A stretch of DNA of 64,000 nt from NCBI RefSeq assembly GCF_000143415.4, contig NW_003314268.1, forward strand, positions 3,666,559 to 3,730,558, in the 5' to 3' direction. Of the stretch, positions 5,901 through 64,000 are shown one piece after another. This stretch comes from Selaginella moellendorffii (lineage: Eukaryota; Plantae; Lycopodiophyta). The position numbers and the translations under genes were made by a program. The notes beneath the pieces were generated by a model. That model saw only the letters and a list, made by a program, of their open reading frames with translations. It did no database searches and was not told where the DNA came from. Each line of letters starts with the position of its first letter. Positions within the stretch are counted from its first letter, which is position 1.

Positions 5901-6946
5901 CACGCCTCCCTGCAAGTACATCTTCGGTTAGTACATGACAAATTCAACAAAATATTGTACCAAAGACGTGGTGCACCAAAACAGTTTGCAAATACCATCA
6001 GGTCCGAAATGCACGAGACGTTGAATCCCGCGGCAGTAGCATGGGAGAATGCTTTTTTCTGTTCGTGCAAAAGCATCATCCTACGCATTTCCATCGCTTT
6101 GAGCAAATCCTTCCTGCAAAACTTGCAAATGATCAATACATCTTTCTCTTGATACACGAAACGCACTTGGAACCATCTAATAGAGCAATGCCTGCATAGT
6201 CAAACGAAGGTCGCTTCGGGTAAACCTACGAAAAAAGTTAGTGACGAAGATCCACAACTGCGCACTTGAGTGATACGCTTACGTACCTTGGTCTGGCTTC
6301 CGTGTTGCTCTACATCAGACTTGTACAAAGAAAGATTTCCTGCACAGACGAGACATTTGAGACTTCAGAAGCCCTTGCAAGGTGTGAAAAAAGTACCTGT
6401 TCTTGGAGTAACAGGAGCACTCTAGAATCGAAGCACGGGATCAGTAATTCTGAAAAAGAACTCAAGCGACGCCTTACCCATGAAGAATCAGAAATAAGGA
6501 TCGAGGTTGCGTCATCGAGCTTTGCGAGCTCCGCTTCGAGTACGCTAACACTCTCCAAAACATCCGGAGTGCTGACAAATCTCACAAATCTAGCTCCAAA
6601 AGGAATAAAAAAATTTAAGCCCACAGATAATTTAAAATGAAGTTGTAATAGCTTACCGTTCTACAGTTCTCTTAGTGAACCAAGGGGATCCATCCCCAAC
6701 GAAAGGCGGGGCTTGCAATATGATGAAGCTCCCCCCTTTCGCGATCTGCTCCTTAGCAGCCCTGAGATGCGCTACAAACGGCTTGACCGATCCAGAGGCC
6801 AGCTTCTCGTTCTTATCTCCAGCGCATATCCAAAGCTCACATCTGCGAAAGAAATCCCAGTAGCAAAGCGGCATTCCTCGCGACAAACCTCACCTGGCCT
6901 CGTTGAGCTGGAAAACGCAGTAGTCCAACGGCGTTTCCCCCTTCAT
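2939..6946 (-). CDS. COP1-interacting protein 7 (CIP7)-like protein, multi-exon
   Basis: N-terminus MKGETPLDYCVFQL...RCELWICAGDKNEKLASG..KPFVAHLRAAKEQIAKGG...WFTKRTVERFVRFVSTPDVLE; mid-region AFSHATAAGF...DL..FANCFGAPRL and GRFYDQYQEKREAKL; C-terminal RGIRKFLRFGRRS. These are the family's conserved blocks. Confidence 0.85.
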
Positions 6947-18290: not shown

Positions 18291-18942
18291 CCATTCTTTG
18301 AATCTGTTATCGTTAAATCATAGTTGAGAACTCTGTCTAAAATGTCCATGTTTAGCCTCACAATAAATTTGTTTGTGATATATGGTGCGGCCAGCTTCTT
18401 GGTGACAATGGCATCAATATTATCGCTCTTGACTATTATGTGGTACAAGATATCTAAAGCATAACCACCCTGATAAAGACTAACANNNNNNNNNNNNNNN
18501 NNNNNNNNNNNNNNNNNNNNNNNNNNNNNNNNNNNNNNNNNNNNNNNNNNNNNNNNNNNNNNNNNNNNNNNNNNNNNNNNNNNNNAAAACGCTGTCAATT
18601 GCTTTCTCAAGCTCTTGCTCCTGATGTTTGCCAATCTTGGATAAGACATGCCTCGGGACACCTCCCCACTTGTCAAACCTCTTGTCCACCTCAGCCTTCG
18701 GATGCTTAAACACCTGATCGTTTAGTGTGTAGATTTCTTCATGAGACCACGTCGGGATAAAGAGCTTGATCACATTGTCTCCTTTGAAGAAGTGATGGTG
18801 ATTTTGCCGGCCAGGTGAGGTGGTTATAACAACCTTGCAAGGCAGGCTCCAATAATACTTATCAATCTTCCAATCCACCAGGTACCACACCTTGCCTTCC
18901 TCCTCGGCCTCCACCCAATTCGTAGTGACGGCAGGGCTGACA
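18291..18942 (-). pseudogene. CR-type NTPase fragment, inverted copy 2 (spans a 100-N gap)
   Basis: WYLVDWKIDKYYWSLPCKVVITTSPG...LFIPTWSHEEI...RFDKWGGVPRHVL; reverse complement is collinear with 17682-18265. Confidence 0.75.
18486..18585. other. assembly gap (100 N)
   Basis: Run of n characters. Confidence 1.
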
Positions 18943-42540: not shown

Positions 42541-43622
42541 ATGAAGGCAGTTGCAATGCCGTCGTTTTTGATTTTGCTTACTGCTCTCTGTGTGAATGGG
42601 CAAGCGACTGCTCCGACCATCAAAAGTATCTTCGGTTCCTTCGATCAAATTGGAGATATTGTTTCGAAGTTTAATTTCTCCCAGGTATGTAGACTTTGTC
42701 GTTCAGATACAAGTCTTTTACTGAGTTTACCCTTTGCAGACTGATTCTTCTGGTCAAGGCTCCCTATATGTTGCCTTAGCTCCAGCTTTTGGCGATCTGA
42801 ATGCAGAAACTATAAAGAGTCTGGGCACCAATCTCTTGATTTCTATTGCTGGAACAAACAGGGTGATTTCGAAGTTGGATGGCACAGCACGTACATGGAG
42901 CAAAGTAGAGTCGGTCATGTCGCAGAATCCGTTCCTTGAGCCAGTAGATGCAGGAATCAGAAGGTCAGACAAGTATATAAGAGACGACACAAACTACTTC
43001 CAGTTTGATAAATCTCTGCGACCTGAAGTTTGCCAGGAGGTAAAGCAGCTTAATCCTTGTCTCATGTTGAAATTGTATTATATAATTGTTCTTCCCTTGA
43101 ACAGCTGAAGACATGGTTCTTTGAGAAACTTATCCAGGACAATGACGTACTTGCTTCTACCAGGATTCAATCTGATGCACTCCCTCAGATTGTGGCATAT
43201 GCAGGCTCTGCTGTTCCGAAGTTCTTAACAATCTACAAGCACAAGTATCATGAGAAGACCCTGGTTGATATTGGTGTGCTGAGATATCCAGACTCCATAG
43301 ATAAACTCTTTAAGGTTAGCAGGAAACTTTGATATAACATTGCCATTAACGTTTTTTATTTCATTTTGTGATATAGTTGTACCATCTGCAGCTGACTGTT
43401 TGGGCTGATAGCACGCTCGTCTTAGGTGTGGAAAAGGAAACTAATGGCATTACTGGAGGTAACCATGTACTTTAGTCATTTTGTTTGCCTCTATTGTGTT
43501 GTTTATGTTGTGCAGAGTTTTCCTACCGCAAGTTTAAACCGAGAATAAGCGTCATATCTGGGATGAGGAAGGAAATTCAGGCAAAGGCTGCTAACGAAGC
43601 CAAATCCATGTTCACAATTTGA
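42541..43622 (+). CDS. secreted protein of unknown function, tandem paralog A (5 exons)
   Basis: Signal peptide MKAVAMPSFLILLTALCVNG. Spliced ORF shares QNP.LEP, WF..LI.D.D.L.STRI, HEKT...IGVLRYPD, NGI.GEF..RKFKPR.SVI with paralog B. Confidence 0.8.
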
Positions 43623-43709
43623 AAACTATGTACTGATATTCAAAATATACATAAACTCATAACGAACCGAATAAACATTGCTATATAAATTCTGGAAATG
43701 TTTGTTTTT

Positions 43710-43949
<240 letters not shown>

Positions 43950-44343
43950 CAATTTATCATTAGTGATTTCACAATCACAATTGCGTTATGTGTGTTATGG
44001 TAACTGCAGTTGTTTAAATTTCTTAATGAAGCGCATAAATAAATAAAACAGCTTCTATAGAATATTTTCTTCTTGATTTTCTTTGTTTTCACAAGATTGT
44101 AAATTTAAGTTCGTTTTCACAAGATACTCCACTATTACTATGGCTCTATGTTGGGAATAACTATTTTGTCCATTACCATTACTGTTGCTCTATGTTGGGA
44201 ATAATTATTCTGTCCATTGAAGTTGTTGGAGAATTTGAACAATTTGAGTCAGACAGTCACTACTAATAGTACTACCACTAGGGTATGCTTGCCTTATAAA
44301 TACTTAGGTTGCTTGATTTATTTTGGCAAGAGTGCCATCCATC

Positions 44344-45531
44344 ATGGGTAAGCTCATTCCACTTGTTGCTTTTATGAGCTTTGTCTTGAGCGCAAATGCC
44401 CAGTTTCAGCTGATCCCTACAATTGTGAGTATCTTTGGTGGATTAGACCCAATTGGCAATATCATCCAGCATTTTGACTTCAGCAAGGTGATGCATTTAG
44501 TTTTAGCTAGCATTTGACTAATGGCTATACATGACAGGTCAACATTGTCGACTCAACTGTCCAGGACTATCTTAACATCGGATTGGCTCCTGCATATGGG
44601 ACACTCAGCACGGATGAAGTCAAATTCATGGATGACCATTTGAAGGTCATGATAGCAGGAGTTCATGTGCAACTCGGCAAGTTATCACATAATGAACGTA
44701 CATGGGATAAAGTTCAATCACTCTTTCTGCAAAACCCCGTGCTTGAGCCACTCAGTGATCTTACTACAAGAGCTACTAAATATACAAAGGATGACACTTA
44801 CTGGCTCAACACGGATGGATCGCCTAGACAGACTGTGATGAATGAGGTAAATGTTCTATGTTCGAGTTTCATAATTATTTCTTATCTTTGAGTCTACAGG
44901 TCAAGAGTTGGTTCACAGAACTGATAGCAGATGCTGACATCCTCAACTCCACACGCATTGATATCAATATTATGGGTAGAATTGTTGCTCACACGGGTAC
45001 AAACATCGAGAACATTATAAATTTGTTCTACCAGCATGAATACCATGAAAAAACTATGCTTGAGATAGGAGTGCTCAGATATCCTGATATAGAACACCCC
45101 TACTTCAAGGTTAGTAAAACAGCTTTTAAAGGATTTTTCTTTTTGTTGAACTTCTTAATTCAGGTGTACCGTATCAAACTTTCTGCGTGGTCTGATTGCC
45201 GTCGATACGTAATACATGAAAGTAACACAAATGGCATTTCCGGAGGTATTACTTGTTGACTTGTCCTCCCGACGTTACATTAACTTTCGTTGACTGGCTT
45301 GTAGAATTCAACATGCGAAAATTTAAACCAAGAAAGAGTGTCATAGATCAACTCAGCCCCAAAGCTACGCAGACTGCAGTGTGCGGTGCTGAATGCATGT
45401 TTGATCCTACCAACTGTGGTAATTGCAAACAGACAGCTAGTTTCAACCATAACATCGCTAAGCACAAAGCTATCACTTCCAAGAACAAGTTTGTTCAGAA
45501 AGCTGAAGAGATGTTTGCTCCATACTATTGA
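44344..45531 (+). CDS. secreted protein of unknown function, tandem paralog B (5 exons)
   Basis: Signal peptide MGKLIPLVAFMSFVLSANA; same intron positions as paralog A; extended Cys-containing C-terminus. Confidence 0.8.
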
Positions 45532-48297: not shown

Positions 48298-48825
48298 TCA
48301 TTTCTTGACAAACCCAAGGTTGTTTTCGGCGGCATAGCGCTCCATGAAGCGCATGAATCTGTCCCACTCGCCAATGTTCCTCATCACGTACTTGGCCTCG
48401 ATCTTGGCCGGCTTCCCGTTGACAAACTTGGCGCTCACGTCCACGGACTGGAGCACGCCCTCGTCGTCGATCATGTAGATGCCCGTGATCTCTCCCATCT
48501 CTCGGGAGGAATCAAACACCGATGGCTGGTCGAAGACGAAGGTGGCCACCCCGTTTCGTTGGTCCTGCGATCGGGTGAGAGAGATGTCCGGGACGACGAG
48601 CTCGTCCACGCCACGGATGAATTGGATGCTGGGCTTTACCATGCGCACCACCGGCCTCACTCCGGATCCACTCTGCTGTGTGGCTGCCGCCCACACTGTG
48701 CTCAAGAGCTGCCTCGAGCTCGACCTTGTGCCGCCGCCTAGGTGCCATGACGAGAGTGGCTTGAGCTCGCTCCAGTGAGGATTTCGAGAGAGCGATGCGG
48801 AGGCGAGGCCTGCACAAATATTCAT
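48298..48825 (-). CDS. psb28: photosystem II reaction centre Psb28 protein, chloroplast precursor
   Basis: Transit peptide then KPSIQFIRGVDE.VVPD..LTRS...NGVATF.FDQP...EITG.YMIDDEG.L..VDV.AKFVNGKP..IEAKY.M....EWDRFMRFMERYA..N.LGF.K. Confidence 0.96.
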   Translation of the reverse strand: MNICAGLASASLSRNPHWSELKPLSSWHLGGGTRSSSRQLLSTVWAAATQQSGSGVRPVVRMVKPSIQFIRGVDELVVPDISLTRSQDQRNGVATFVFDQPSVFDSSREMGEITGIYMIDDEGVLQSVDVSAKFVNGKPAKIEAKYVMRNIGEWDRFMRFMERYAAENNLGFVKK

Positions 48826-49399
48826 CACTTAGTTTGGCAGAAGAGTCTCGATCTACAAAAAACTTGCGTTTCACGGAAGAAAACACACAAACTACAATCG
48901 AGGAAGAATGAATGGCAATACTCTGGGGAAAGAAAGACTGCCAAGCCAAAGATTCTCTCTAGAATGAAGAGAATGCAGGTGATTGACGACGGGATTTCTG
49001 TGACCGAAAGATTCATCCAAGCTCCAAACAAGGATTTCAATCCAAGGAACGTCAAAAGGTGAGGAAGCACTATACCCGCTCGAGAGAGGAGGAATGTTGC
49101 TGCGCGGCGGAGCGGGGGAATCCGTGTCCGTCGCTGCCGCTCGCTGGCGATGGATGCGGCGTAGAGCGGCACATAGCGCTGGTGCTGCTGCCTCTGGCCG
49201 GTGGACGCAGCCGCCGAGGCCGAGGCGCTCGTCGACATAAGTCTGCTCTGTCTGATCGCTCTCGCCCCATTCCCTACCACACACTGCACACCCGAATCTC
49301 GAATATTCTACACATGCTGATTATCCGTTTAATGTTGGCGCGGGTTGAAGGTTCAGGGTCCAGTTCTTATTTAAAAGTTTAACTAATTAATAGATTATG

Positions 49400-52300
49400 T
49401 CAAAATTCTAAATTCTCAATCATGTCTTAGAAGCATCTAAAGATTTAACCAGTAAATTAAACCACTCAAAAAAGCTTTGTATTAAAGAATTAATTTTTGA
49501 TGTGAAGCAACATTATTTGCTGAAAATTTATTTGATGCAATTAATATTATAATGCAACTATAATAAAAATATAGCTATAACTTATTGTGAATCTATAATG
49601 CTACTTTGGAGAGACACCTTTGAAAAGTCTTACAAATGATTAAGTTTTTTTGTTTAACAAGTCGAAGTGTGACTTTCTTAAATGAGGTGGTATTTTAGAA
49701 ATGACTAACACTACTTGTATAGTAAATTATAAAGTGTTTAAAAAAGTAATTATAGTTTTGTCATTTTCTTTTTCCTTGATGACAACTTTATGACAAAATA
49801 AAGGATGATAAGAAAATCCCTTCAACCATTAAAGGAATATTTGACCATAAACATAAGTGCTACATCTATTTAGTATAATCATCTCATAAATCACCAAGCT
49901 TTTATTTACAAGTAAATTAAGTTTCTTCACCTCTTTAAAATTTCAGATTGTCTTGAATGCCCCATTTAGCCTTCACAAGCATTAAGCTCTATAGAAATTG
50001 TTTCTTGAATTTTTACCATGGGATATGGAAGAGTTATCACAATAGACTCCTAAGTTATATCTACAATGAATTTTGTCATATCACTTTAACATTCTTTTAT
50101 CCCTTCACAAGAGTATAATTCTTTCCATGATGTCTAGGTTTCTAAAATTGCCTTCTACTTTATCTTTCTTCTATTAGTCTAAATAAAATTTGTTATCCAT
50201 TCTTTAAGCCTTGACATGGCAATGGTTTTCCTCCTTGAATATAAGATTGATTGATTATCATAATGACTATTCTATTGACTGAGTTGACTAGCAACTTTGA
50301 TAAAAAGGTCTAAATCTTGATGGAGCTTGGTAATAGTATCAGTGAATATTGTCAAAAAATCCTTCCTAACCTTCTACTTTATTAATATATATTCAGAAAA
50401 AGAAATATTAATAAACAAAAATATGTTGGTTTGTGAACTGATATAATCTTATGAAAAACTAAACTAAGTCTACAACCCAAATTTTCTAGTTTTGAAAGCC
50501 TAAGAAATTTTCAGTTATTTCAGTGTATTCTAGAGCATAGACCATTCTTGAGCTCATGAGCTAAAGAGTTGAGCTCATGAGTTAAGCTCAATTTTAAATT
50601 TTAGTATAATATAAATATTATAAATTTTTAATAAAATTAAGGTTTATGGTGAACTTAATATTTTCACTCTTTACACTTTATATAAATAAAAATGTTTTAG
50701 AAGACACTTTTTGTCCAAAAATTTAAATACTTATTGTAGGGAGGTTCGCTATAACATATAATAAAATAAGATTTGTTTGAAAAAAATGTAATCTTGTCAA
50801 TTCCTTAAATCCGTACTATGTGCTTTCTAGCTTTTAAATATCAACTTTGTAATGAGTTTAAAAATTATTAAATTTGAAATAATATTCTTTTGAAAGGCCA
50901 TATAACTGTTTTAAAGGGAAAAAACAACCATTAATGTAAACTTGTTACTTATAAAAGAGAGAAAATAGAGACTTAGTTCTTCTTTAGAATACATTTTTAA
51001 GGTATTTGTTATAGCATAGTATTTATAATTTATGGATCTTCACTTGTACTCTCTTTCAAAAAGAGGGAAATACACACAAATGTTTGTGAGTTTTAATATT
51101 GGTAATTTCAACTTTTACAATATTTCTTCCTATAATAGTAATTCAAGGGCTTAGTGGTACAATACTCATTCTGTTGTGTAAACCACATAAAGATAGAATC
51201 ACAAATTGGAGAGAAATACAATGATAAAAAGTGAAATAAATTAGGTGTAGAAATTACTTATTTTAGGAAATTACAATTTCATGACTTTTAAGAAGTTCTT
51301 TAGATATTTTTGGCTTTCAGTGGAAACAATGGTGATAATTAATATGATGGTGTTTATGCTCTTGTGATACACTGCAACATCACCTAAAAGTGTATAAGAT
51401 AAAGTATATTTTTTATTAATTATATAAATTATAATAAATTTATATTATTGATAGGGAATAAACAATAATAGACCTAGTTATCTTCAAAAGTCTTTTAAAA
51501 TTCAGCAATACTAAAGTCTGTCTAATATATATAAATGTTCGCTTTAGAATCTTAGTGTTAGGTGTTAATGAATATGTAATACATATGCTTGTAAAAAGTA
51601 TATGCCTTCCCATGTTCCTCGTGTTTAGTAAAGTTTGGACATATTTAAAAAGGAAAGTCTTGAATGATAATTATGTATTTTCCACCTTCCATTTTAACTA
51701 TGCACTCCTTTGCAAGCATAGTGATATATGTTGTGGAAAGAATCTCACACTCAAGCATTAAGCTAAGCTTATTTTACCATATTTTTAAGTGGAGATAGTA
51801 TCAATAAAATTAAATACCTTATCTTTTCTTACTAACCGTTTATGCATTTTTATAGGAATAGTGTCAATTTTGTCTCTCAAGTCTTAAAATCTTCTCCTCT
51901 CAAGATTAAAACTAGATTTTTCAAGGTTTTGAATCTCATCTAAAATGAATACAATTGGCCATTCTTTAGGTATTACTATCACTATACTGTATGATTGCCA
52001 TTGATGGTGCAGCAATATAGTTAGCACTATTTTGAAAATCTTACTTGCTTTCATTCCCCATAGAAATATGGGGCTGGAACAAAACTAGATTTGTCACCAT
52101 GGATTGAAGCCTAATAGTTGCCCCTCAAAAACATTTTAATTGGTTAAGGATTTTGGGATATTTAGGTGTTATTGGGTTTAAATAGTATTAGGCTGAGTGA
52201 TTTCTTATGAAGTCTAAATTTAGAAGTTTACAACACTCTTGCTATTATGCTCTATGTATTGGTCCTATTTGGTCCCAATAACTATTTATGAAAAGTGTCT

Positions 52301-53100
52301 AGATTAGTAAGTGGGGCATATCTATCCAATGTGATTCCATATTTAATAAATTTTTGTGAGTATCCCAAAGACTAATGCCTTAGGTGAAAGCCTCGAAACA
52401 TGCTTTCATATAAAAAAGGAGGGGGTTCCAAATATATAATAGAGATAATGGGTATGTTAGGCATAGTCAACCAACTTAAGGCATAATTTAACTCCTCACT
52501 TGCGTACTTGTTCTTCTTTTATGCGTGTTATATAGACTTAGTCTTCTAAAATGTAATAGTCCTGTAGACATCTAAAATTGGGTGGTTTTAGGCTTGAACT
52601 TTGAATCTTGTGAAATCAAGGGTAGTTACAAAACTTCATCATCCTTAGAGATTAAAGAAGTTAACTAACTTAGTTATCTCTATTTGCTTTTTCCTCTTTT
52701 TTGTTTTCCTTCTTCAATTTGTGAACTTCCTTTTGTAAATTCTCAATCTCAATATCTTTAGTTGTATGCTGTAATGGTGTAGCCTGAAACCTAAACTCTT
52801 CCTCTTTGATTTAGCCTCAACCTTTTTCTCGTTGGGGGTTCCAAATGTATAGTAGGGATAGTGGTTGGAATGCATGTTCAACCACTTGAGACATTAATTT
52901 GGCTTCTGTTGGGCTATGTCATTTCTTATTTTGTGTTTGGCTTGGGTCTAAGCCTAAGCTTTGCTACTTTAGTCGATATCTTTCTTGCGTTAGACCATTG
53001 GTAAGTCAAAATTGTGCCAGACACCATCTTACACCGTTTTGCGTGTAAGTGCTGAATACAGGGAGCTAGTACTTGTGGGATTGTATCAGACCCTTGTTTT
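49400..53100. repeat. AT-rich transposon debris, including further fragments of both LTR families (52100-52520, 52830-52960)
   Basis: Fragments match the TRIM LTR and the 1.1-kb LTR; no credible ORFs. Confidence 0.6.
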
Positions 53101-56100
53101 CTAGTGCACGTGGTTTTTATCCTTTATCCTAAACCCTCTATATGCCACATGTCACATATCACCTACCACATGCCACGTGTTTAAAGGATAGTGGTGCAGA
53201 ACCTGAGTTTCAGGGCTTTAGGCCATTGAATGAAGGAACGAAGCCAAACTCTTAAGCATGGAGTTAAAGAGTGAAAGAACTGGAGCATGGAGTGACTTTT
53301 AAGTATTCAGCCTAAGGAGCGAAGGGATAAAAGCACGGAATGACTTGGAACAATTATAGAGTATCTAGCATCCCAATGCTAGGACCATCATGCAAAACAA
53401 AGTTAAATAGAGTCTAGTGCTATTTAGCATACTATTAGCCTAATGTGAGGATATAGGTATTCCACCAACTAAGATGATATGGAACTTGGGCTTAGATCCA
53501 AGCCGAACACAAAATAAAGACAAGTATACAAGTAGAAGTTGCATTATACCTCATGTTAGTCAGCTATGCCTAACTTACCCACTATCCTTACTATACATTT
53601 GGAACCCCCTATAACGCCACCCCCGAAGGAACATACCCTTTGGGCATTCACCTTTAGCCACCTTTAGTACTAGGAATTTGTCTTTAGGATAAACTCAAAA
53701 CTTATTAAATATAGAATGTACTTAGATTGCAAATTTGGATATGGGATGAACACCATTGTATTCAAAACATAGATATGCCAAATTTAAAAATCTAGACACT
53801 TTCCATAAATAAACATTTGGTACCGGAATGAGATTAACACAAAGGGTATAATAGCGAAGGTGTTTGGTAGATATGGTAAGCTATCATCCAATGATATTGA
53901 GGGACTAATCTCAATATGTGAGGGTTTTTGTTACTAAATAATACTCTTTACTGGGCTAAGTATGCTTAGTTAATAGCACGAAGGAATTCCGTCCTTATGC
54001 TCATCTGGTCTAAGCACACTCGAAATGCCCAATTAACTCCAAAACCACAAGAGGGATTGATAAAGGGTTCAACAATACTGACTTCTTGCTATTGTGGTTG
54101 TAAGGAAAGAATATTCGAAAGGACTAACTGACAGCTAATTTTTGATACCCAAAGTCACATTTGCGACACTCTTCCCCCTTTAGGGAAGATCGATGTCCTT
54201 GTCGATGCATACTCCAATCTAGACTGCCGCCAAAGAAACAACTCTATTAAAAGTTCATTGTGATCACACTATGTGAGAAATGTACTAACTTAAATGAGTT
54301 AGGGTAATTTTTTTATCTAACACGGATGCACTACTAACTCAAACACCTTTTGGTTGTCACCGATAAGGAAATGACTAATAGAGTTAGCCACCCTTGCTGC
54401 TCTGGGTGTCACCCAGCTTACAAAAGTGTGATATGCCCTTGCTTGTAAGGACATAGAGAAAGAAGCTCCAACCCTCATGAGCAAAGAAACTAAACCTTTC
54501 GATAAGGTTTAGATAAACTATTATAAATAGGCAGTTAGAGTTGTTTATAAGGTCATGTCCTTTTAATGGAATAAGGAACATCGATAGAGAGACGGGTGAT
54601 ATGACCAGTTGACAGTAGCTACCCCATAACTAAAGATTTCACCATACACACGAAGTGCGGAAGCTAATTTGCCTATACTAGCCCAAACCTAAAGATCAAT
54701 AGATGAACAATATCAAAGTCAAAGACAATGATATCTTAGAGGCTTAATTATCAGTGATTAAATCTTAGATTACAATACAAAGTATTCCAAGTAAGTTATT
54801 ATCTGATAAACAAGAATTATAGGAATTATAGGAAGGAACTACCAAGATCACTATAGTTGGAAAACATAAGATTAACCATCTAATAATATTTAATAGCCAG
54901 TGTATCATCAAGAAAATTTAATATAAAATTTAACTATCAAATATTGTAGATAGTATGCTAAACAATTTATGAAAGATAACTTAAAGAACACAAAGTATTA
55001 CTAATAGATAAGAAAAATACTCGCGAATGTATCACCTAAAGGAAATAATATTTTAATCTATCAAAGCTAATTCGAGCAACAATCAATAGAACAGAATGAA
55101 TATGGTAAGACTAACAAACATTCGTTCATGCTAACTATCACATTAGTCAACCTAAATAAATTCTGATCAACAATAAGAAGGAACTCAAGTTTTTTAACCA
55201 AGCATTAGCAATATTCTAGGGATATCTCAAACCCAAGAGACCAATACAAAGCAAACCACAAAAAACATGTTGTAATACAAAAAACTATAAACTATCAAAG
55301 AGAATAACTAATTATCATGAAAGATCATCAATCATCTCATCAATAGAGAGATGCATAATCATTATTAAAGAAACAATTTACCATCATGAAGAATGACAAA
55401 TCATTCAACACCAATAATAATCTAGCAAAATCTTTGATAAGGATAATGAACTATTCTAGATGACAGTCAATCATCACTAATGATTACCAAATGCAAATAC
55501 TAACTTCAATATCAAAATTAATGAGCCAAATACCTTCCCCAACAACTCTTAACAAATGGAATAATAAGAATAAAACTCAAAGAACTAAAATTTTGAAGAA
55601 GTATATAGTCAAGTTTTGCCTAACAATGATCATGAATATCATATAAACCAACTTCAATGCTAAAGAAAAAATCATGGTACAACCCACAATATCCTCTTTA
55701 ACACATCCATAAGTTAAACTTCATAATATAAGGATAATAAAGAGCATTTTTACATCAATCCAAAAGTCAAGCATAACAAAGCTATGCTTAACAAGTGACC
55801 ACCAAACTGATCTTCCATGAATCCACTCATATTAAGACGTAACTCACTTTATAATAAGCACAAAAGAAATCATCAATGATCAATATATCCCAACTTAAAT
55901 CCAATAAAGATTTAAACATTCCGATATCAATTTCTAACTCTTCCTCTTGTAAAGTTAGCATAGTTCACAATTAAATCACTTTTCAAGGAAAACTTAAAGC
56001 TCAACCCTTACTAAACAATCTTATCTAGAACACAACTAACTCAACTTGCCACTCAGTTTATTTGAACGTTAATACAGTTGCTAACTAGCAAATGCACGAA

Positions 56101-59100
56101 TGTCAATAACATAAATCTACAGCCCAAGCATTAACATTATATGCATCGAGATTAATGAAACTCAATATTAATTTACAGAGAGACATCTCATCTCACTCGA
56201 ATCTCAATGTCAATAATGTCAACAATAGAGCATCACTTCAATGCTATCAACACCAAAACAAAGCTAAAAGAAAGTAAGAGTGAATCACCACTCAAAACTC
56301 TTTAGCAACTAAGTTAACTAAAGTTGAAGATACTATACTTAATATTCGAGACTAGTTCTTCAACAATACTCAGCTACAAATAACACATCATCAAAGAGTG
56401 ATTCATCACATCCAAGACTCGATGAAATCTAATACTACGGACTAAATATAACAAAATGATATTGATAAAAGTAGAGTCAATATGCTCATGATCCTCTGCA
56501 ACACCATCTAGTAAAGCAAGTCCATCACTATTAAATCATCATCGAGCGAAGCAAGTATCAATAGTCCTCAACAAAGTCTACATATAATCATTAGTTGCAA
56601 AGTAACTAATAATCACTATTCAACTTGTCTTCACAAGACCCAAACACTAAACTTGTGCCATTAAGTTATATATTTGTGTAGCATGAACATAATACCCCAA
56701 ATATGAGATAAAAGTTCATGGATAAACATGAACTATATGACTACTCAAATCCAATTCAACCATAATAAGCTCACTAATGCATTTAGCCAACAGCTTTAAG
56801 CATGCCTTGAAGAGGCTAGGTATGCATGATCAACACTTAATCGAAATTAAAGTGAAACCATAAGATGAACTCATATTGGTACACAACCTCCTCAAAAACA
56901 AAGCTATAGTATAGGTACTAACATCTTAGCCTCAAACAACTAAGCTGGACATCACTATACTCAACCAAAGCATAGGGCCACCAAAACTAAATCAGGATCA
57001 GTGAGAGCTCATTACTCTCATAGAGTTTAATGAAATGCAAGGTGTAATCTGCCACTAAGCATAATATTACAGAAGAAAAGCACAAGTGTCACCTTTCTAA
57101 AAAAGCACAACGGCCACTTTTTTACACCAACTCTAGACTCTATTCAACTCAATTGTCTTAGCCCCAAAAGTTATAATCCTTTTCGGGCCACATCAAATAA
57201 ATTATATATTAATGTCAAAGTTAATTGAAGTCAACTTTAACCCTTTCACTAGTTTGTATTGGCTTATGAAAATGGAATGGTTTTCGAGCAAAATAATTAA
57301 CAGATTAGTCATTGGAAAAGTCTAAGTAAATTTATAGGAAATTTTCCATCCCAGAGAAAAAATGAGTATAAGTCTAGGAATACAAACTTTCAAGACTCAA
57401 CCAACTTCCTCCTACTAACAACTTCATATAGGTTAACCTCAACACAGGTTCTCATGACCCAACAGTATATCTAAGCATCAAACATTTTGCCCATATTTCC
57501 AACATCTAACACCAACATCCATAAAATGCAAAATGAATATCTAAAACTTGATCATGAAGACCACATCTTTGGATATCCACATTACATTTAATATTTTTCT
57601 TCAATCACCTTCAAGACCTAATGTAAAGCCAAAACACTAATAAAAAAAATGACATAAAAATTCAAGGTCTAAAGAAAATTCTTGTCACTCGAAACTACAA
57701 TACCACTTTCACTACACAAACATTAGCAATGTCAATGCCTTAATTTCACACCTTCTCTATCCAATAATCTATTCCAAGTGCTAACAGATGAATCAACAAG
57801 TCATAACAAGTGAATGTTACAACCCTTTCCAACACTTCATAGGCAAACCCTCTAGGAAACAAAGTACTAACTTAAGTTTAGCATAATAGACCACCATTGA
57901 GAATCTAATCAAAGTTATTAAAATGCTACTATTTGCAAGTAGATTAGCATCACTATCAACCATTTTAGGGTTGATCATCATCTAACCAAACAACTTTATA
58001 AACATATTGCTCATTATCATATGGATATAATATAAAAGTCACAATGACTTGATTATCAATTGAGCAACATCACGAGCAATGTTAATGTCATTACTTCAAA
58101 GGTTTATATGAGTATCAAATGCCAACTTGATTTAACAAAATATAATATAAATGCCATGCCCCACTAATAGAGATTTATAACACTTAACACCACTAACTTT
58201 CGTTCACAACATAGACAAGCTCATGCCACTCTTTATCCAACTAAACTCAAAACTAATCCAACACCAAGCTACTTAAAGAGCAATAACAAGGTTCATCGGA
58301 AAAGAATTGAGCATTGCAACCTAAATTTTTAATAACAAGCTTAGACAAAATGGTTTAGCACTTCACCACTATCCATCCCATAACTCATCATTTGTAAAAC
58401 CATCATTTCCAATATGCATCAAGGTAGGGATTATTGATTGCATACTATGAACATGAGCAATTATCCAGGAAGTTTAAGTGACCCCCTTCTTTTTTTTTTC
58501 CTTACAAGTCATTTATTTTTGTAAAATCATTATTTTAATATATAAACTTTGAGTATTTTTCCATAGAGTCACACCTTGTTGCAAATCATTTCTTTAAGAA
58601 GAGAAAATGATTTACATGTTTGATCCTTTGTCTTTGATAACTCTCTTTTCGGTCTCATTTTTTACCAAACCTTAAGCTTGCTTTCACACTGCCTTCAGTC
58701 CAATTCTAGAAAAGATTATAAGAGAGGATGGCAATGACTACTTGAACCAATAGACTAATCCCTACAATCTTGATTGATCCACTTATAATCATGCTTAGGA
58801 AGGATCCACTAGTGCTGTGCTAAACAACTATGAACTAGCCTATTTGTCACTCATAGCAAACCTAAGGAAGGTTTACTTTCACCCACAGTACATGGAACAA
58901 TTTATGGAACCACCGATAGGCTATATATTAATCCTACCAACTCAAAGTGTAACATTGAGTTGCTAATATGCCTCACTCACAAGCCCAAGCACAAACTTGT
59001 GCAAAAATGGTACAACTCAAATCCATCTTGCCAACTGAAAGTGTAACCTTGAGTTGCTAATATGCCTACAAAATGAAACATCCCTGTTCATCTTATAAGC

Positions 59101-59640
59101 CCAAGAGCAAACTCACATAATATAGTACAAAAAGGTAACCAAAATCCATACCTAAGGAATGCATGCGAAGCGTTTGCACACAAACGTGTACCCATTTAGA
59201 TCATTATTTTCATCTCTACATATGCAATGAGACTAATTGCCCAATCTCATTGAATAGTACTTGCTGAGACGTATCCTCTAATACCAAATGTAACACATGT
59301 GGTACCCTAACCATAGGATAACGAACTTAAACCCTCCATGTGCCACGTGCCATATGCCATGTGTCCAAAGGATAGTGGTGCAAAACCCAAGTTTCACTGA
59401 ATGAAGGAACGAAGCCAAACTCTTAAGCATAGAGCCAAAGAGCAAAGGAATTAGAGCATGGAGTGACTACTGAGCATTCAGCTTAAAGAGCGAAGGGATA
59501 GAAGCATAAAATGACTTGAAACAATCATAGAGCATCTAGCATTCCAATGCCAGGACTAACATGCAAAATGGAGCCAAACGGAGTTTAGTGCTATTTCAGC
59601 ATACTGGTGGCCTAATGCGAGGATATGGGTACCTCTAGCT
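53100..59640 (-). mobile_element. degenerate LTR retrotransposon (no intact ORFs; superfamily not determinable)
   Basis: 3' LTR ~53100-54168 preceded on the minus strand by a polypurine tract (54169-54181). tRNA-iMet-type PBS (TGGTATTAGAG, 59276-59286) next to a truncated 5' LTR starting at 59289 that repeats 53130-53460 directly. Confidence 0.75.
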
Positions 59641-59675
59641 TTCCCTAGCCAACTAAAAATGTCAGACTTGAGACC

Positions 59676-60817
59676 TGTCGAGAATGTGATTTTAGGTATC
59701 AAAAGTTACCTATCAACTAGTCCTTTCAGATATTCTTTCCTTACTGCTACGATGGTAGGAGGTCAGTATTGTTGGATCCTTTATAAATCTCAAATTAGTT
59801 GAGAAACTGGTAATGACATGTGCACTTAGACTGAAAGGGCACTAAGGAAGGAAATCCTAAGTTATCATTTAATCAAACATACTTAACACAGTGATGAGAA
59901 ACTCATGATGTTGACTTGCATTTGCTAGTGTTAGGAACCCCTGCAATGTTGAGCTTGGTCCCTCAATATTCAGTTGATGATAGTTTACCGTGTCTACTAA
60001 ATACTTTCGCTATTATGCCCTTTGTGTTAGTCTCATTTTGATCTCAAATACCATTTATGGAAATTGTCTAGATTTGCACATTTGGCATATCTATGAAATG
60101 CAGAGATTGTCCTGAACACAATGGAGTTTGTCTCATGCCTAAATTCACAATTTAGTGCCATTCCATATTTAGTAAGTTTCGAGTTGGTTTTAGAGACTAA
60201 CTCCTAGTACTAAGGATGTCTAAGAGTGAAAGCCCAAAGCGTGCATTCTTGAGGGGGCGGGGGGCGGGGGGGGGGATATAGGGGATTTTAAATGTATAGT
60301 AGGGATAGTGGGTAAGTTAGTATAATTAACCAACTTGAGGCATAGTTTAGCTCCTATTTGTGTGCTTATCCTTATTTTGCGTTTGGCTTGGGTCTAAGCC
60401 CAAGTTCCATACCATGCTAGTTGATGGAGTATTTATATCCTCGTGTTAAGCCACTGATATGTTAAAATAACACCAGACTCTGTTTGGCTCCATTTTGAGT
60501 GCTAGTCATAGCATTGGGATGTTAGATGCTAGAACTGTTCTAAGTCGCTCTGTGCTCCTGACTCTTGGGCTGTACATACAAGAGTTGCTCCATGCTTTGG
60601 TTCTATCACTCCTTGGCTCCATGTTTAAAAGTTTGGCTTCATTACTTCATTCAGTGGCCAAAGGCCCTAAAATTTGGGTACTGCTCCACTGCCCTTGGAC
60701 ACATGGCATGTGGCACGTGGCATATGACACGTGGCATATGGAGGGTTTAGGTTCTGCTTCGTGGTTATCCTATACTAAATCACCATAGGATAAAGGGTAA
60801 AAACCACGTGAATTACA
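59676..60817 (+). mobile_element. solo LTR (~1.14 kb, TG...CA) of the same family, opposite orientation, with 5-bp TSD AGACC
   Basis: Reverse complement of 53100-54168; AGACC at both 59671-59675 and 60818-60822. Confidence 0.85.
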
Positions 60818-60822
60818 AGACC

Positions 60823-61571
60823 GCTCTAATACCAAATATAAGTTCCTGAATCAAATGTAAACTCTTGAATTTGGAATTCCCAAAATGTCATCCAGCCTAG
60901 TAATATTCAAACCTAAGGACGCTTAACCCCAAGTATTCCAAGAACCAAATGAAAAAGGGAGTGCACTTTTGTTCATGAGCCTTTTCCTTTTATATTTGAA
61001 CCTTTATAGATCATTTCTTGAATTGTTCTTTTTAGTTGTTTACAATCCATAAATTCACGCCCTCGTAAATGAAAGCTGAGAGCTACAACTCTCCTGAAGG
61101 CCCCACTTTCTTGACACCCCACAGGTCGAGCCCAGCCAAAGCGACCTGGATCTGCTAAATGTTAATTTCAATATGTGGTATGATTTCTCTAGTCTATTTT
61201 AAAACTACTTTGATACCATATGTAAGCTCCTGAATTTGGACTTCCTCAAATGTCATTTAACTAAGTAATATTCAAACCCAAGGACATTTAACCCCAAGTA
61301 TCCCAAGACCCTTAACCTATTAGAAAAGGGGGTGCACTCTTATTTATGGGCCTTTTCTTTTCACATTTAAAAGCTTTATGGATCATCTCTTAAGTTGTTT
61401 TCTTTGGTTGCTTATATTAGAAGTACTACTCAAACCTAAAAACACATAACCTTAAATATCTTAAAACATTTAATTGATTAAAAAAGGGGTGCACTTTATT
61501 CATAAGCATTTTTTCTCTATATTTAAACCTTTATAAATTTTCTCTTGAATCATTCTCTTTAATTGCTTACA
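60823..61571 (-). mobile_element. TRIM-like miniature LTR element(s) in tandem
   Basis: ~190-bp direct repeats 60856-61044 and 61221-61416 (third partial 61420-61571); ~175-bp internal part with PBS TGGTATCAAAG (61208-61218); second PBS at 60823-60834. Confidence 0.7.
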
Positions 61572-62756
61572 TCATTATAATAGTAAAGAGAGAGTGTCCA
61601 AAAGGATTGGCTAATAAATATTTTTAATACCCAAAATCTGATTTGCCATAACAATTGATATCCCTTCTACTTAACAAGGAGCCCCTTAAACACTTAAGAT
61701 TAGCAATAATAGTACAAAGGTTATTTTCCACTCATCACTATATTGAATGCAAATAAAGTTATAAATGTTATGTAAGTCAATAATGATGAAGAACCAAGCT
61801 TTCGAGAGGTAAGCTCAATACGTGAGAGTTCTTACCAAGCCAGTGTAGACAAAAAAAAAAACACTAATAAATTGGGCTAAATATACTTGATTAAATAGAC
61901 TTATCTAGCTAAGTATAGATACTAAGCCCAATTTACTAACCTTTGGACAAAATGGGCTAATAAAAGGAACTAACAATATTAATCTTTTGCTATTGTGACA
62001 ATAAGGAGAGAATGACTGAAAGGATTAACCAACAAGTATCTTTCAATACTTGAAGTTATATTTGTGATAAAGTGGCCATAATGAGTATAAAGAATATTTT
62101 CCACTTGTCACTATTTTGAATGCAAATATGCAAGTTAATCTTGATGAAGAATCAAGCTTTAGAGAGCTAGTGCCACATCTCAAGGATTAATAAAGGTGGA
62201 TTGAAAATATAAAATAAGAATAGTGGGCAAGTTAAATGCATGGTTGACCACTTAGAGATATTGTATAGCTCCTTGTTAGGCATGTTTATCTTTGTTCTGT
62301 GTCTAGCTTAGGTCTAAATGTAATGTTTATACTACTGTAATTAGTAAAGTGTTTATGCTAAAATAACACTAAACTTTTGTGTGTTGGTTTTGGTGTTAGA
62401 ATTCTAAATACTTTAGTGTTTATTCTATGTTCATGTTCCTTCATTCCTTGGCTATACATTTAGGGTTTTAGCTCTATCCATTCATTTAGTCACTTTATTG
62501 CCTTTGGCACATGTGTCCAAGAGTTAGTTTCCACTTCATGATTATTCTATAACAATTCACTATAGGGTATAGGTAAAACTCACATATGACTTATTTAAAT
62601 TCCACAGCCCAGAATATACCCTTTTATCCTATAGCTTTACTACGGTCTAAATCCATGCAAAAGGCCAAACAATCTATTTGTCTGATTTCCTTATTTTATC
62701 ACTTAAAAAGTGTTTTAAGAAAAATAGACAAGAGTAGTTACTTATAGTGGTTCCAG

Positions 62757-62803
<47 letters not shown>
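62757..62803. repeat. (TA)n microsatellite
   Basis: TA tract. Confidence 0.95.
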
Positions 62804-62809
<6 letters not shown>

Positions 62810-63085
62810 TATAAATAAGAATTAAATATTTTAGGGATCATTTAACATATAAAGGGGATTTAGTGCCAAGTGGAACTCATATCAGAGTACCTAAAAATAT
62901 TGACTTAAATATAAAATTAAAAAATATTTAAAAAATAAATATTCGTAAAGAAATAATAAAAATAAAAATAAATTATTAATTTACTAAAACTTTAACCTAT
63001 TAATACATTATATAAGAATACATAAGTATGAAGCTATATCGTTCATTTAATTCTATTACTTAAATTTCATTGAACAACTTAAAAT

Positions 63086-63490
63086 ATGTTAAAGTTACAT
63101 CTTCAAATTTCTATATGTATTTTATTGATATTTAATTTTTCTTTTATCACAACTAAATCAACATTTCAGTGGGATGAGATTATGATATATCATCTTAATT
63201 ACTACTTTAATAAATATGGAAAAGATGTAAATGTGTTTATATATAAGAAAGATTTTGAATTTAAAAATAAAACGGAACCAAATCCTTTATTAGAAAATTT
63301 AGATTTCAAAATAGGTGGTGATCCTTATGAAGTTATAGTTTTTCCAGGAGAAGCTATGTATAAGACAAATGATGAATATGGTTGGCAAATTTGGTCTTTT
63401 ATAGGATGTTTTTATCATACTCATGAATATCCAAACTATGTAGAGTTTTATGAATTTAAATCTATATGTGGTAAAAATGAGAATAACTAA
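63086..63490 (+). CDS. small secreted protein, YvgO-like (tentative)
   Basis: Intact 134-codon ORF in very AT-rich DNA; signal-peptide-like N-terminus; NVFIY...PYEVIVF.GE...D.YGW.IWSF.G.F...VEF motif string. Confidence 0.55.
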   Translation: MLKLHLQISICILLIFNFSFITTKSTFQWDEIMIYHLNYYFNKYGKDVNVFIYKKDFEFKNKTEPNPLLENLDFKIGGDPYEVIVFPGEAMYKTNDEYGWQIWSFIGCFYHTHEYPNYVEFYEFKSICGKNENN

Positions 63491-64000
63491 AGTGATTTTC
63501 TTACTATCAATTTATATTAGCTTTTAAGATAATAGATACAATTTTTCAATATAATATAAATTATAGTGTTTTCAAATTAACAAGAAAATAAAAAAAACGA
63601 GAATATTTTTAAAAAAATATATATAAATCTAACTATGCTAGGATATATCCTTATTTCTTTGTTATAATGACGCTTAGCATAATTCCTTTATTAGTATAGA
63701 CTAAATCTTTTGTAATTTTATATTTCTGTCATTTATTTATACATGATTATACTAAAATTATATTTTTCCTCACTTAACAGAATTTTTATTAATTTATTGT
63801 TAATAACAAATAAAAATAATGTTTTTAAAAAGAATCAGAATTTTTCATATAAATATTTCTCTAATGATATTAGTATTTCAAATATTTTACACTTTCTATT
63901 TAATGTGGTTATAACAAATCAATGTTTTTTAAGATTATAGTATTTATTGAGGATAAATATTTATAATTTTAAAAACATATAATTAAATATATGAAACATT

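What the first reader, a model, noticed from the sequence alone, without database searches (positions are those of the whole stretch)
63086..63490. Intact, extremely AT-rich, intronless secreted ORF resembling bacterial YvgO-type antifungal proteins, at the edge of a TE nest
Seen: an uninterrupted 134-codon ORF in DNA of roughly 75-80% AT (by eye), where stops should occur every few codons. It has a hydrophobic signal peptide, two Cys in the mature part, and codon usage unlike every other gene in the window. Recalled knowledge: the C-terminal order NVxx / YxxxVF / G..DxGWxxWxFxGxF / VxF matches the Bacillus YvgO family and related fungal small secreted proteins, and a B. thuringiensis YvgO has been described as antifungal. 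Inference: a horizontally acquired or fast-evolving apoplastic defence gene likely missed by annotation.
Basis: partly seen in the sequence, partly recalled or inferred. Interest (0 to 1): 0.75.

Follow-up and report, generated by a model that had tools for sequence, protein, structure and literature searches.

The report
Diverged YvgO-like secreted gene, spikemoss
An intact, unannotated 134-codon gene in very AT-rich spikemoss DNA encodes a small secretion-type protein that is probably a very diverged relative of the bacterial YvgO "stress/antifungal" family. The link is weak, expression could not be tested, and the scan has already noted many such copies in this genome.

Summary
Window 63086-63490 (+) is an uninterrupted 134-codon ORF in about 19% GC DNA. 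It has a hydrophobic signal-type N-terminus, two Cys in the mature part and GC3 of 16%, against 52-73% in the window's plant genes. Its composition marks it as coding sequence, not a chance ORF.

The YvgO reading is partly supported. I fetched a genuine Bacillus velezensis YvgO and its family (Pfam PF25411, DUF7888). A family HMM aligns ORF residues 41-116 collinearly at about 20% identity. It scores 9.5 bits (P about 3e-4 against shuffles; P about 0.025 with the signature motif held fixed). However, hhalign gives 1.5% probability, and a chance stretch elsewhere in the window scores as high. The family's N-terminal block is missing. An exhaustive search of 1.84 billion proteins found no relative.

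Recent horizontal transfer has no support: the tree branch is saturated and the synonymous sites match the flanks. Expression could not be tested because no sequencing run was listed. The gene is unannotated in Selaginella moellendorffii scaffold GL377572.1.

The scan had already noted at least 14 YvgO-like ORFs on other DNA of this genome. This is one more, unusually diverged, copy. Interest is modest.

The parts
63086..63490 (+). Intact intronless ORF, 134 codons plus TAA stop; candidate gene for a small secreted protein
   Evidence: product not on record in the gene collection
63086..63160 (+). Predicted signal peptide, residues 1-25: Lys3 and His5, hydrophobic core 8-21, T-K-S before the likely cleavage site
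   Evidence: Hydrophobicity profile. The single-sequence AF2 model gives a confident helix over the first 20 residues. Heuristic only; no dedicated signal-peptide predictor was on hand.
63206..63433 (+). Residues 41-116, the stretch that the DUF7888 (YvgO family) HMM aligns collinearly to profile positions 35-107
   Evidence: MAFFT alignments
63380..63412 (+). Signature motif G-W-x-x-W-x-F-x-G-x-F (residues 99-109), shared with bacterial YvgO (there GDGGW-I-N-W-A-F-R-G-W-F)
62757..62808 (.). (TA)n microsatellite at the point where GC falls from about 30% to about 19%
62810..64000 (.). Extremely AT-rich block (19% GC) that holds the ORF and runs to the end of the window
62894..62930 (.). Left arm of a 37-nt imperfect inverted repeat that brackets the ORF (partner at 63702-63738)
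   Evidence: I17; 30 of 37 complementary, reached by 1 of 100 Markov-1 shuffles. Meaning unknown.
63702..63738 (.). Right arm of the same inverted repeat
63008..63016 (+). TATA-like TTATATAAG, 70-78 nt upstream of the ATG; not evidence by itself in 81% AT DNA
   Evidence: read

Best explanation
This is a real protein-coding sequence in the nuclear genome of Selaginella moellendorffii (scaffold GL377572.1, record 3729644-3730048). It is not annotated. It encodes a 134-aa precursor.

Inferred route: a cleavable N-terminal signal peptide (about residues 1-25) sends the protein into the secretory pathway. This releases a mature alpha+beta domain of about 109 aa: one N-terminal helix packed on an antiparallel sheet. 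The domain may be stapled by Cys108-Cys128 and carries an N-x-T sequon at Asn61.

The domain is most likely a very diverged, N-terminally shortened member of the DUF7888/YvgO family (PF25411). It is probably one copy of a lineage-specific set of AT-rich, intronless copies that the scan has noted elsewhere in this genome.

By analogy with YvgO of Bacillus thuringiensis SF361, the only member with a reported activity, the most likely role is an extracellular antifungal or stress-protective protein. I suggest the conserved aromatic strand (Trp100, Trp103, Phe105, Phe109, with Tyr82 and Phe87) is the working surface, perhaps binding a fungal wall or membrane component.

Shown here: the ORF, its coding-type composition, the collinear weak similarity, and the lack of annotation. 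Inferred: secretion, homology, fold and activity.

The gene has lived long enough in methylated, decaying repeat DNA for its synonymous sites to match the flanks while the frame stayed open. That argues for past purifying selection. Present expression is unknown.
For: Coding signal. GC1 is enriched (P 7e-5) while GC3 equals the flanks. Trp, Gly, Glu, Pro and Asp exceed a chance ORF. P(134 codons open) is about 9e-7. None of 2000 simulations reached the observed open length.

Family link.
- A DNA search with the motif taken from the ORF pulled out a gene 100% identical to NCBI 'stress response protein YvgO [Bacillus velezensis]'.
- An HMM of 59 family domains scores 9.5 bits and aligns mature residues 15-90 to profile positions 35-107. 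P is 3e-4 against full shuffles and about 0.025 with the motif held fixed.
- The ORF keeps seven columns that are invariant in the alignment: N and V of the NV.VF block, F of the VF block, then G (the Gly of Gly-Trp), the second W, G and F.

Fold.
- AF2 with the family alignment gives pLDDT 86.4 and pTM 0.79, against 47 and 0.31 for the single sequence.
- The strands of the low-confidence single-sequence model fall where the alignment-based model puts them.
- The best ESM Atlas match is a DUF7888 cluster, TM 0.72.

Size and layout. Precursor size, signal peptide and C-terminal position of the motif all match bacterial YvgO.

Context. The window carries plant genes (VQ, PPR, DUF936, RPOL_N) and sits in a 3.9-Mb Selaginella scaffold.

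Published activity. Antifungal activity of YvgO is cited in PMC8703302 and PMC9755354.
Against: - The exhaustive phmmer search of 1.84 billion representatives gave no DUF7888 hit at E<=1e-3, and the word search gave none.
- hhalign against the family gave probability 1.5%, E 0.035, over 26 columns only.
- A first HMM gave 4 bits, over the motif only.
- PSSM tests of the part before the motif gave P 0.097 and 0.42.
- Against the window's 1531 open stretches the HMM E-value is 0.23, and a 40-aa chance stretch scores the same.
- The family's N-terminal block, with its invariant D, L, I, R, V and K, is absent.
- The tree branch is about 10 substitutions per site.
- The AF2 and Atlas results are biased by the supplied alignment, and no shuffled-query control could be run.
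- No expression data were available.
- GC3 of 16% is far from the host's expressed genes.
Confidence: 0.6

Rival explanations
1. It is a genuine lineage-specific orphan gene for a small secreted protein, unrelated to YvgO. The aromatic G-W..W.F.G.F strand and the NV.VF-type strands are then convergent or chance features of a small beta-rich protein.
For: The coding signal is strong, yet every database-scale search is blank. hhalign gives 1.5%. An equal HMM score arises by chance within the same window. The first third of the family domain is missing.
Against: The HMM alignment is collinear over 76 residues and beats 97.5% of shuffles that already hold the motif. Size, signal peptide and motif position match the family. 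Earlier unchecked scan notes report many clearer YvgO-like ORFs of the same size and composition in this genome.
Confidence: 0.2
2. It is a silent relic: a former YvgO-like gene stranded in methylated, decaying repeat DNA. Its frame is still open but it is no longer transcribed or selected.
For: GC3 has equilibrated with 17-19% GC flanks. CpG is strongly depleted in the adjoining repeats. The nearest called gene on the left is 13.8 kb away. The gene is not annotated and no RNA run was listed. Earlier notes on paralogs report no sign of expression and broken neighbouring copies (unchecked).
Against: An unselected frame would not stay open through the C-to-T decay implied by the composition (P about 9e-7). 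The Met, signal peptide, both Cys and the Trp codons are all intact.
Confidence: 0.25
3. The AT-rich end of the window is foreign or mobile DNA. It could be a recent horizontal or viral insertion, a small inverted-repeat-bounded transposon carrying the ORF as cargo, or an assembly join at the (TA)n run.
For: GC steps abruptly at a microsatellite. Codon usage is unlike the host genes. A 37-nt inverted repeat brackets the ORF, P about 0.01.
Against: No relative was found in 2.9 million viral contigs or in the JGI metagenomes. There is no close bacterial relative: identity is about 20% and the branch is saturated. No gap lies at the junction, and the scaffold continues 177 kb past the window. GC declines stepwise through decayed repeat copies before the block. 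The ORF's synonymous sites match its flanks.
Confidence: 0.1
4. It is a chance open reading frame with no coding history.
For: It lies in repeat-rich, gene-poor DNA and has no detectable relatives.
Against: None of 2000 simulations reached the observed length. GC1 excess has P 7e-5. There are three Trp and seven Gly where 0.3 and 1.4 are expected. The Met sits two codons after the upstream stop and is followed by a signal-type segment.
Confidence: 0.03

Closest known systems
YvgO 'stress response protein' family of Bacillus, Streptomyces, cyanobacteria and myxobacteria (Pfam PF25411, DUF7888); YvgO of B. thuringiensis SF361 is a reported antifungal protein
   Same: It is a small Sec-type precursor with a single domain of about 110 aa. 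The order of the blocks is the same: helix, NV.VF strand, Y...VF strand, G-W..W.F.G.F strand, V.F strand. The motif sits near the C-terminus. The predicted alpha+beta fold matches when modelled with the family alignment.
   Different: Identity is only about 20%. The first 30 or so residues of the domain (the D-V-L-G-I-A ... N-R-x-G-F-V-K block) are missing. G-D-G-G before the Trp is replaced by N-D-E-Y. Two Cys and a C-terminal tail are added that the bacterial proteins lack. GC is 24% and the gene sits in a plant nuclear genome. The bacterial members are 50-70% identical to each other, so this ORF lies far outside their spread. The mode of action of YvgO itself is listed as not available.
Other YvgO-like ORFs of Selaginella moellendorffii noted by this scan (132-149 codons, AT-rich, mostly intronless, signal peptide), said to form a fern-and-lycophyte branch
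   Same: Same genome, size, composition, lack of introns, secretion-type N-terminus, lack of annotation and setting in AT-rich repeat DNA (AI notes, unchecked).
   Different: I could not fetch those sequences. A look-up by sequence found no stretch at roughly 60-70% identity, so this copy is not a recent duplicate of a noted one. Its membership of that branch is inferred, not shown.
Eukaryote-like DUF7888 genes: tandem copies on ENA metagenome contig ERZ25067825:ctg181095 (L120), and Basidiomycota clusters with the same predicted fold
   Same: They show that the family or fold occurs outside bacteria, as intronless and sometimes tandem genes.
   Different: The L120 copies are still about 52% identical to Bacillus YvgO and carry acidic repeat tails. 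This ORF is far more diverged. The Basidiomycota clusters were matched by shape only.
TPM domain (PF04536, TLP18.3/Psb32/MOLO-1)
   Same: The only hit of the exhaustive search (P0001, E 4.8e-4) is a protein with three TPM domains. Each repeat aligns weakly to ORF residues 9-60.
   Different: The match uses the ORF's signal peptide as a strand, covers under half of a TPM domain, and reaches its E-value only by adding three repeats. Pfam finds no TPM match in the ORF at E<=10. Rejected.

Membership tests
DUF7888 / YvgO (PF25411) | Significant match to the family profile | tested here: inconclusive
   The curated PF25411 model is not in the local Pfam copy: genuine YvgO itself gets no PF25411 hit. 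The blank therefore says nothing. My own HMM of 59 members scores 9.5 bits, P 3e-4 by shuffles, but E is 0.23 over the window's open stretches. hhalign gives 1.5%. Exhaustive phmmer is blank.
DUF7888 / YvgO (PF25411) | C-terminal signature G-D-G-G-W-I-N-W-A-F-R-G-W-F followed by V-x-F | tested here: inconclusive
   The core G-W-x-x-W-x-F-x-G-x-F and the V-E-F that follows are present. The nearly invariant G-D-G, N, A and R positions are replaced.
DUF7888 / YvgO (PF25411) | Central strands Y-N-V-M-V-F-N and Y-G-I-W-V-F-E in that order | tested here: inconclusive
   The ORF has V-N-V-F-I-Y-K and Y-E-V-I-V-F-P at collinear places. N, V and F fall in invariant columns. With the motif fixed, the rest of the sequence adds score at P about 0.025. 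Simpler PSSM tests gave P 0.097 and 0.42.
DUF7888 / YvgO (PF25411) | N-terminal block D-V-L-G-I-A ... N-R-x-G-F-V-K, with invariant D, L, I, R, V and K | tested here: not met
   MAFFT and the HMM leave the first 30-34 positions of the domain without a counterpart. The mature ORF starts at about profile position 20-35.
DUF7888 / YvgO (PF25411) | Small secreted precursor with an N-terminal signal peptide | tested here: met
   The hydrophobic core spans residues 4-23 with small residues before position 26. Bacterial members carry comparable leaders. Heuristic only; no signal-peptide predictor was available.
DUF7888 / YvgO (PF25411) | Family fold | tested here: inconclusive
   AF2 with 59 family rows gives pLDDT 86.4 and TM 0.72 to an ESM Atlas DUF7888 cluster. 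Both lean on the supplied alignment. No control was possible and no solved structure exists.
DUF7888 / YvgO (PF25411) | Antifungal or stress-protective activity | not testable with these tools
   Only literature on the B. thuringiensis protein is available.
TPM domain (PF04536) | Match to the TPM profile across the domain | tested here: not met
   No Pfam hit at E<=10. Only residues 9-60 resemble part of each repeat of P0001.

The most novel reading that the evidence does not exclude
Selaginella keeps a dispersed, fast-evolving family of intronless, secreted YvgO/DUF7888-type genes inside AT-rich, methylation-decayed repeat islands. This would be a plant counterpart of the effector-rich AT-isochores of fungal 'two-speed' genomes. 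The family would have been seeded by an ancient transfer from bacteria, possibly spread on small inverted-repeat-bounded elements, and used as apoplastic antifungal proteins. This copy would be one of its most diverged members that is still selected.
Probability: 0.2. Interest if true: 0.6.

Novelty: new member of a known kind. Interest (0 to 1): 0.33.

Why it matters
If the homology and a function hold, lycophytes carry an unannotated family of bacterial-type secreted proteins whose only characterised relative is antifungal. That would add a candidate class of plant defence proteins, and a case of a gene kept intact inside decaying repeat DNA at a codon usage far from the host's. No paper in the searched library mentions DUF7888 or PF25411, and none of the 15 listed of the 22 papers naming YvgO treats it in plants, judging by title and abstract. 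For this copy alone the gain is small. The scan has already reported clearer copies in the same genome. What this one adds is a measure of how far the family has drifted, and a warning that the bacterial profile alone barely detects it.

Tried and rejected
Searches on the ORF that came back blank:
- Pfam and NCBIfam scans of the ORF were blank. I later found them uninformative, because genuine YvgO also gets no family hit in these local libraries.
- A PDB sequence search found only noise.
- The word-index search gave no hits.
- The protein-atlas feature search gave no usable hit, or 0.76 to an unnamed Bacillota cluster.
- tblastn against plasmids found noise only.

Leads that were rejected:
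- The exhaustive phmmer search gave one hit, a protein with three TPM domains. I rejected it as an additive repeat artefact.
- The single-sequence AF2 model was unusable, pLDDT 47.
- A third word search, with a shortened family alignment that included the ORF, was meant to reach the fern and lycophyte members through the length filter. The filter did not exclude the 161-172 aa bacterial proteins, and all 120 listed hits were bacterial or metagenomic.
- The search for related loci with the ORF in viral contigs and metagenomes, and with alignment A3 confirmed against the ORF, found no relative. This gives no support for a giant-virus source.
- Fold searches against the PDB found no convincing match. 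Foldseek E was at least 0.5, and the best VIA Z was 5.5, below the usual chance level. The fold therefore gives no mechanism.
- The phylogeny cannot name a donor, because the ORF's branch is saturated.

- Sequencing runs: none was listed, so no read-based test of expression or of the junction could be made.
- I tried to hop along the scaffold by exact-protein look-ups to reach the other haplotype or the DNA beyond the window. This failed because no called gene lies between Psb28 (window 48298-49238) and window position 58197, where the fetched locus ends.
- The window holds no paralog or relic of the ORF. The tandem 'orphan' pair at 42541-45531 is unrelated.
- The paper by Manns et al. 2012 is not held.

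Full report
**1. What is there**

Window 63086-63490 (+) is an uninterrupted ORF of 134 codons with an ATG start. An in-frame TAA lies two codons upstream, so the Met is essentially the first possible start. ORF GC is 23.7%.

The ORF lies in a block of about 19% GC that begins just after a (TA)n microsatellite at 62757-62808 and runs to the end of the window. Upstream, GC falls stepwise (40%, 36%, 30%) through nested, decayed repeat copies. Their CpG observed/expected ratio is 0.08-0.31, against 0.87-0.90 in the gene-rich part of the window.

**2. More than chance**

- In 2000 Markov-1 simulations of the AT-rich block, the longest open frame averaged 58 codons and never exceeded 126. The observed value is 135.
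- From flank trinucleotides, P(134 open codons) is about 9e-7.
- Conditioning on openness, a chance ORF should have GC1, GC2 and GC3 of about 19, 17 and 17%. The ORF has 32.8, 22.4 and 16.4%, and the GC1 excess has P 7e-5.
- The ORF holds 3 Trp, 7 Gly, 11 Glu, 5 Pro and 6 Asp where 0.3, 1.4, 3.1, 1.4 and 2.2 are expected.

So this is, or recently was, protein-coding sequence. Its synonymous sites have the composition of the flanks. GC3 is 0.16 against 0.52-0.73 for the VQ, PPR, DUF936, DUF6857 and RNA-polymerase genes of the same window.

**3. The protein**

Residues 4-23 form a strongly hydrophobic segment followed by T-K-S. That fits a cleavable signal peptide of about 25 residues, though this is a heuristic call only. 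The mature part (109 aa) has Cys108 and Cys128 and an N-K-T sequon at Asn61.

**4. Where it is**

An exact look-up of the neighbouring PPR protein places the window on Selaginella moellendorffii GCA_000143415.2, scaffold GL377572.1. Record position equals window position plus 3666558. The ORF is therefore at 3729644-3730048, 177 kb from the scaffold end.

The window's only run of N is at 18486-18585. The nearest called gene on the left is Psb28 (window 48298-49238). No gene with the ORF's product is on record, so the ORF is unannotated.

**5. Is it YvgO-like?**

Searches starting from the ORF alone were blank:
- Pfam, NCBIfam and PDB sequences.
- The word-index search.
- The atlas feature search.
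- An exhaustive phmmer search of 1.84 billion representatives. Its single hit (E 4.8e-4) is a protein of three TPM domains. The three repeats each align weakly to residues 9-60, signal peptide included. I reject it as an artefact.

To obtain a genuine YvgO by reference, I searched viral contigs with the motif G-W-x-x-W-x-F-x-G-x-F, read from the ORF and written as degenerate DNA. One of 119 stretches (L033) encodes a protein 100% identical to NCBI 'stress response protein YvgO [Bacillus velezensis]'.

Its relatives occur in Bacillus, Streptomyces, Sorangium, Nostoc, Scytonema and many metagenome proteins. They carry the precomputed label PF25411, named DUF7888. That model is absent from the local Pfam copy, because YvgO itself gets no such hit. 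The early Pfam blank is therefore uninformative.

Direct tests against the family:

| Test | Result |
|---|---|
| BLASTP against YvgO | 21.6 bits, E 0.004, residues 89-123 |
| First HMM (full-length rows) | 4.0 bits, residues 96-126 |
| hhalign | probability 1.5%, E 0.035 |
| PSSM, part before the motif, local | P 0.097 |
| PSSM, part before the motif, anchored at the motif | P 0.42 |
| HMM of 59 non-redundant, domain-only rows | 9.5 bits; mature residues 15-90 aligned to profile positions 35-107 |
| — same HMM against 3000 full shuffles | 1 reaches the score (P about 3e-4) |
| — same HMM against shuffles with the motif kept in place | P about 0.025 |

MAFFT independently gives the same collinear alignment at about 20% identity. 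Seven alignment columns stay invariant with the ORF included: N and V of the NV.VF block, F of the VF block, then G (the Gly of Gly-Trp), the second W, G and F.

Points against the link:
- The same HMM run over all 1531 open stretches of the window gives the ORF E 0.23. A 40-aa chance stretch at 53969-54088 (-) scores the same.
- The family's N-terminal block, with its invariant D, L, I, R, V and K, has no counterpart in the ORF.
- The ORF's tree branch is about 10 substitutions per site, against a median of 0.18.

**6. Structure**

With the 59 family rows as its alignment, AF2 models the mature ORF at pLDDT 86.4 and pTM 0.79. The model is a helix followed by about eight strands. The single-sequence model reached only pLDDT 47 and pTM 0.31.

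The few strands of the single-sequence model coincide with strands of the alignment-based model. The best ESM Atlas match is a DUF7888 cluster (TM 0.72), followed by two Basidiomycota clusters (TM 0.64).

No solved structure resembles the model, so the fold gives no mechanism.

**7. Weighing the evidence**

However, the hypothesis was formed from the same motif. On my evidence alone I put homology at roughly 60-70%.

The scan's earlier notes raise this somewhat. They report at least 14 YvgO-like ORFs of 132-149 codons in this genome that are AT-rich, mostly intronless, unannotated and carry signal peptides. Follow-ups call them an old fern-and-lycophyte branch with no sign of expression. These are unchecked AI notes. 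I could not fetch those sequences, and a look-up by sequence was blank.

**8. Origin**

Nothing supports a recent transfer:
- There is no close bacterial, viral or metagenomic relative.
- Divergence is saturated.
- Synonymous composition equals the flanks.

An ancient transfer into an ancestor of ferns and lycophytes remains possible but cannot be tested here. A 37-nt imperfect inverted repeat brackets the ORF (62894-62930 and 63702-63738; 30 of 37 complementary; reached by 1 of 100 shuffles). This hints at a small mobile unit, but I could not look for other copies.

**9. Function**

Expression could not be tested because no sequencing run was listed.

The best-supported reading is a secreted small protein of the DUF7888 type. 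By analogy with the B. thuringiensis protein, it may act outside the cell against fungi or in stress protection. Reviews list that protein's mode of action as unknown. The suggestion that the conserved aromatic strand is the binding surface is my inference.

That the frame stayed open while synonymous sites drifted to 16% GC argues for past selection. Whether the gene is still used is open.

**10. Verdict**

This is a new, unusually diverged member of a kind the scan has already reported in this genome. Interest is modest.

Noticed in passing
tool libraries: The local Pfam-A and NCBIfam hmmscan libraries do not recognise genuine Bacillus YvgO, although the precomputed labels give it PF25411 (DUF7888). 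Pfam or NCBIfam blanks for YvgO-like candidates in this scan are therefore uninformative.
   Followed up: yes
L120:3006-3830 and 6001-6654 (ENA ERZ25067825, contig ctg181095, 103 kb): Three DUF7888 proteins (P0118, P0119, P0121) come from a single 103,387-bp ENA contig, and two of them lie on L120. That stretch has 30-42% GC and few called genes, and so looks eukaryotic. P0118 carries a long acidic E/D/Q-rich repeat tail. They are still about 52% identical to Bacillus YvgO, which suggests a much more recent arrival in some eukaryote.
   Followed up: partly
L033:7429-7998 (IMGVR_UViG_2923073944_000001): A gene identical to Bacillus velezensis yvgO sits on a 51.7-kb contig filed as viral in IMG/VR. 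It is either prophage-adjacent host DNA or a phage-carried copy.
   Followed up: no
window 52000-62750: This repeat nest has many long imperfect inverted and direct repeats. CpG observed/expected is 0.31, falling to 0.08 in 61200-62750, against about 0.9 in the genic part of the window. Successive repeat copies grow more AT-rich towards the ORF, which looks like methylation-driven C-to-T decay.
   Followed up: partly
window 62894-62930 and 63702-63738: A 37-nt imperfect inverted repeat brackets the ORF and its putative promoter, giving an 845-bp unit. 30 of 37 positions are complementary, a level reached by 1 of 100 Markov-1 shuffles. It may mark the ends of a small mobile unit, or it may be chance in low-complexity DNA.
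   Followed up: partly
window 53969-54088 (-): A 40-aa open stretch holds the exact word N-W-A-F-R and scores 8.3 bits with the DUF7888 HMM, equal to the ORF's score. I read it as a chance match, and it shows how weak the HMM signal is.
   Followed up: yes
window 18486-18585: This is the only scaffold gap in the window (100 N). It lies at the start of a low-GC stretch (18-22 kb, 32-36% GC).
   Followed up: no
It reads as I-Y-I-Y repeats in two frames. Those genes show no similarity to the ORF studied here.
   Followed up: partly
ESM Atlas clusters (rows 2-3): Two clusters of 172-aa hypothetical proteins, mostly Basidiomycota and with no Pfam label, match the DUF7888-type model at TM 0.64 over 91 residues.
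   Followed up: no
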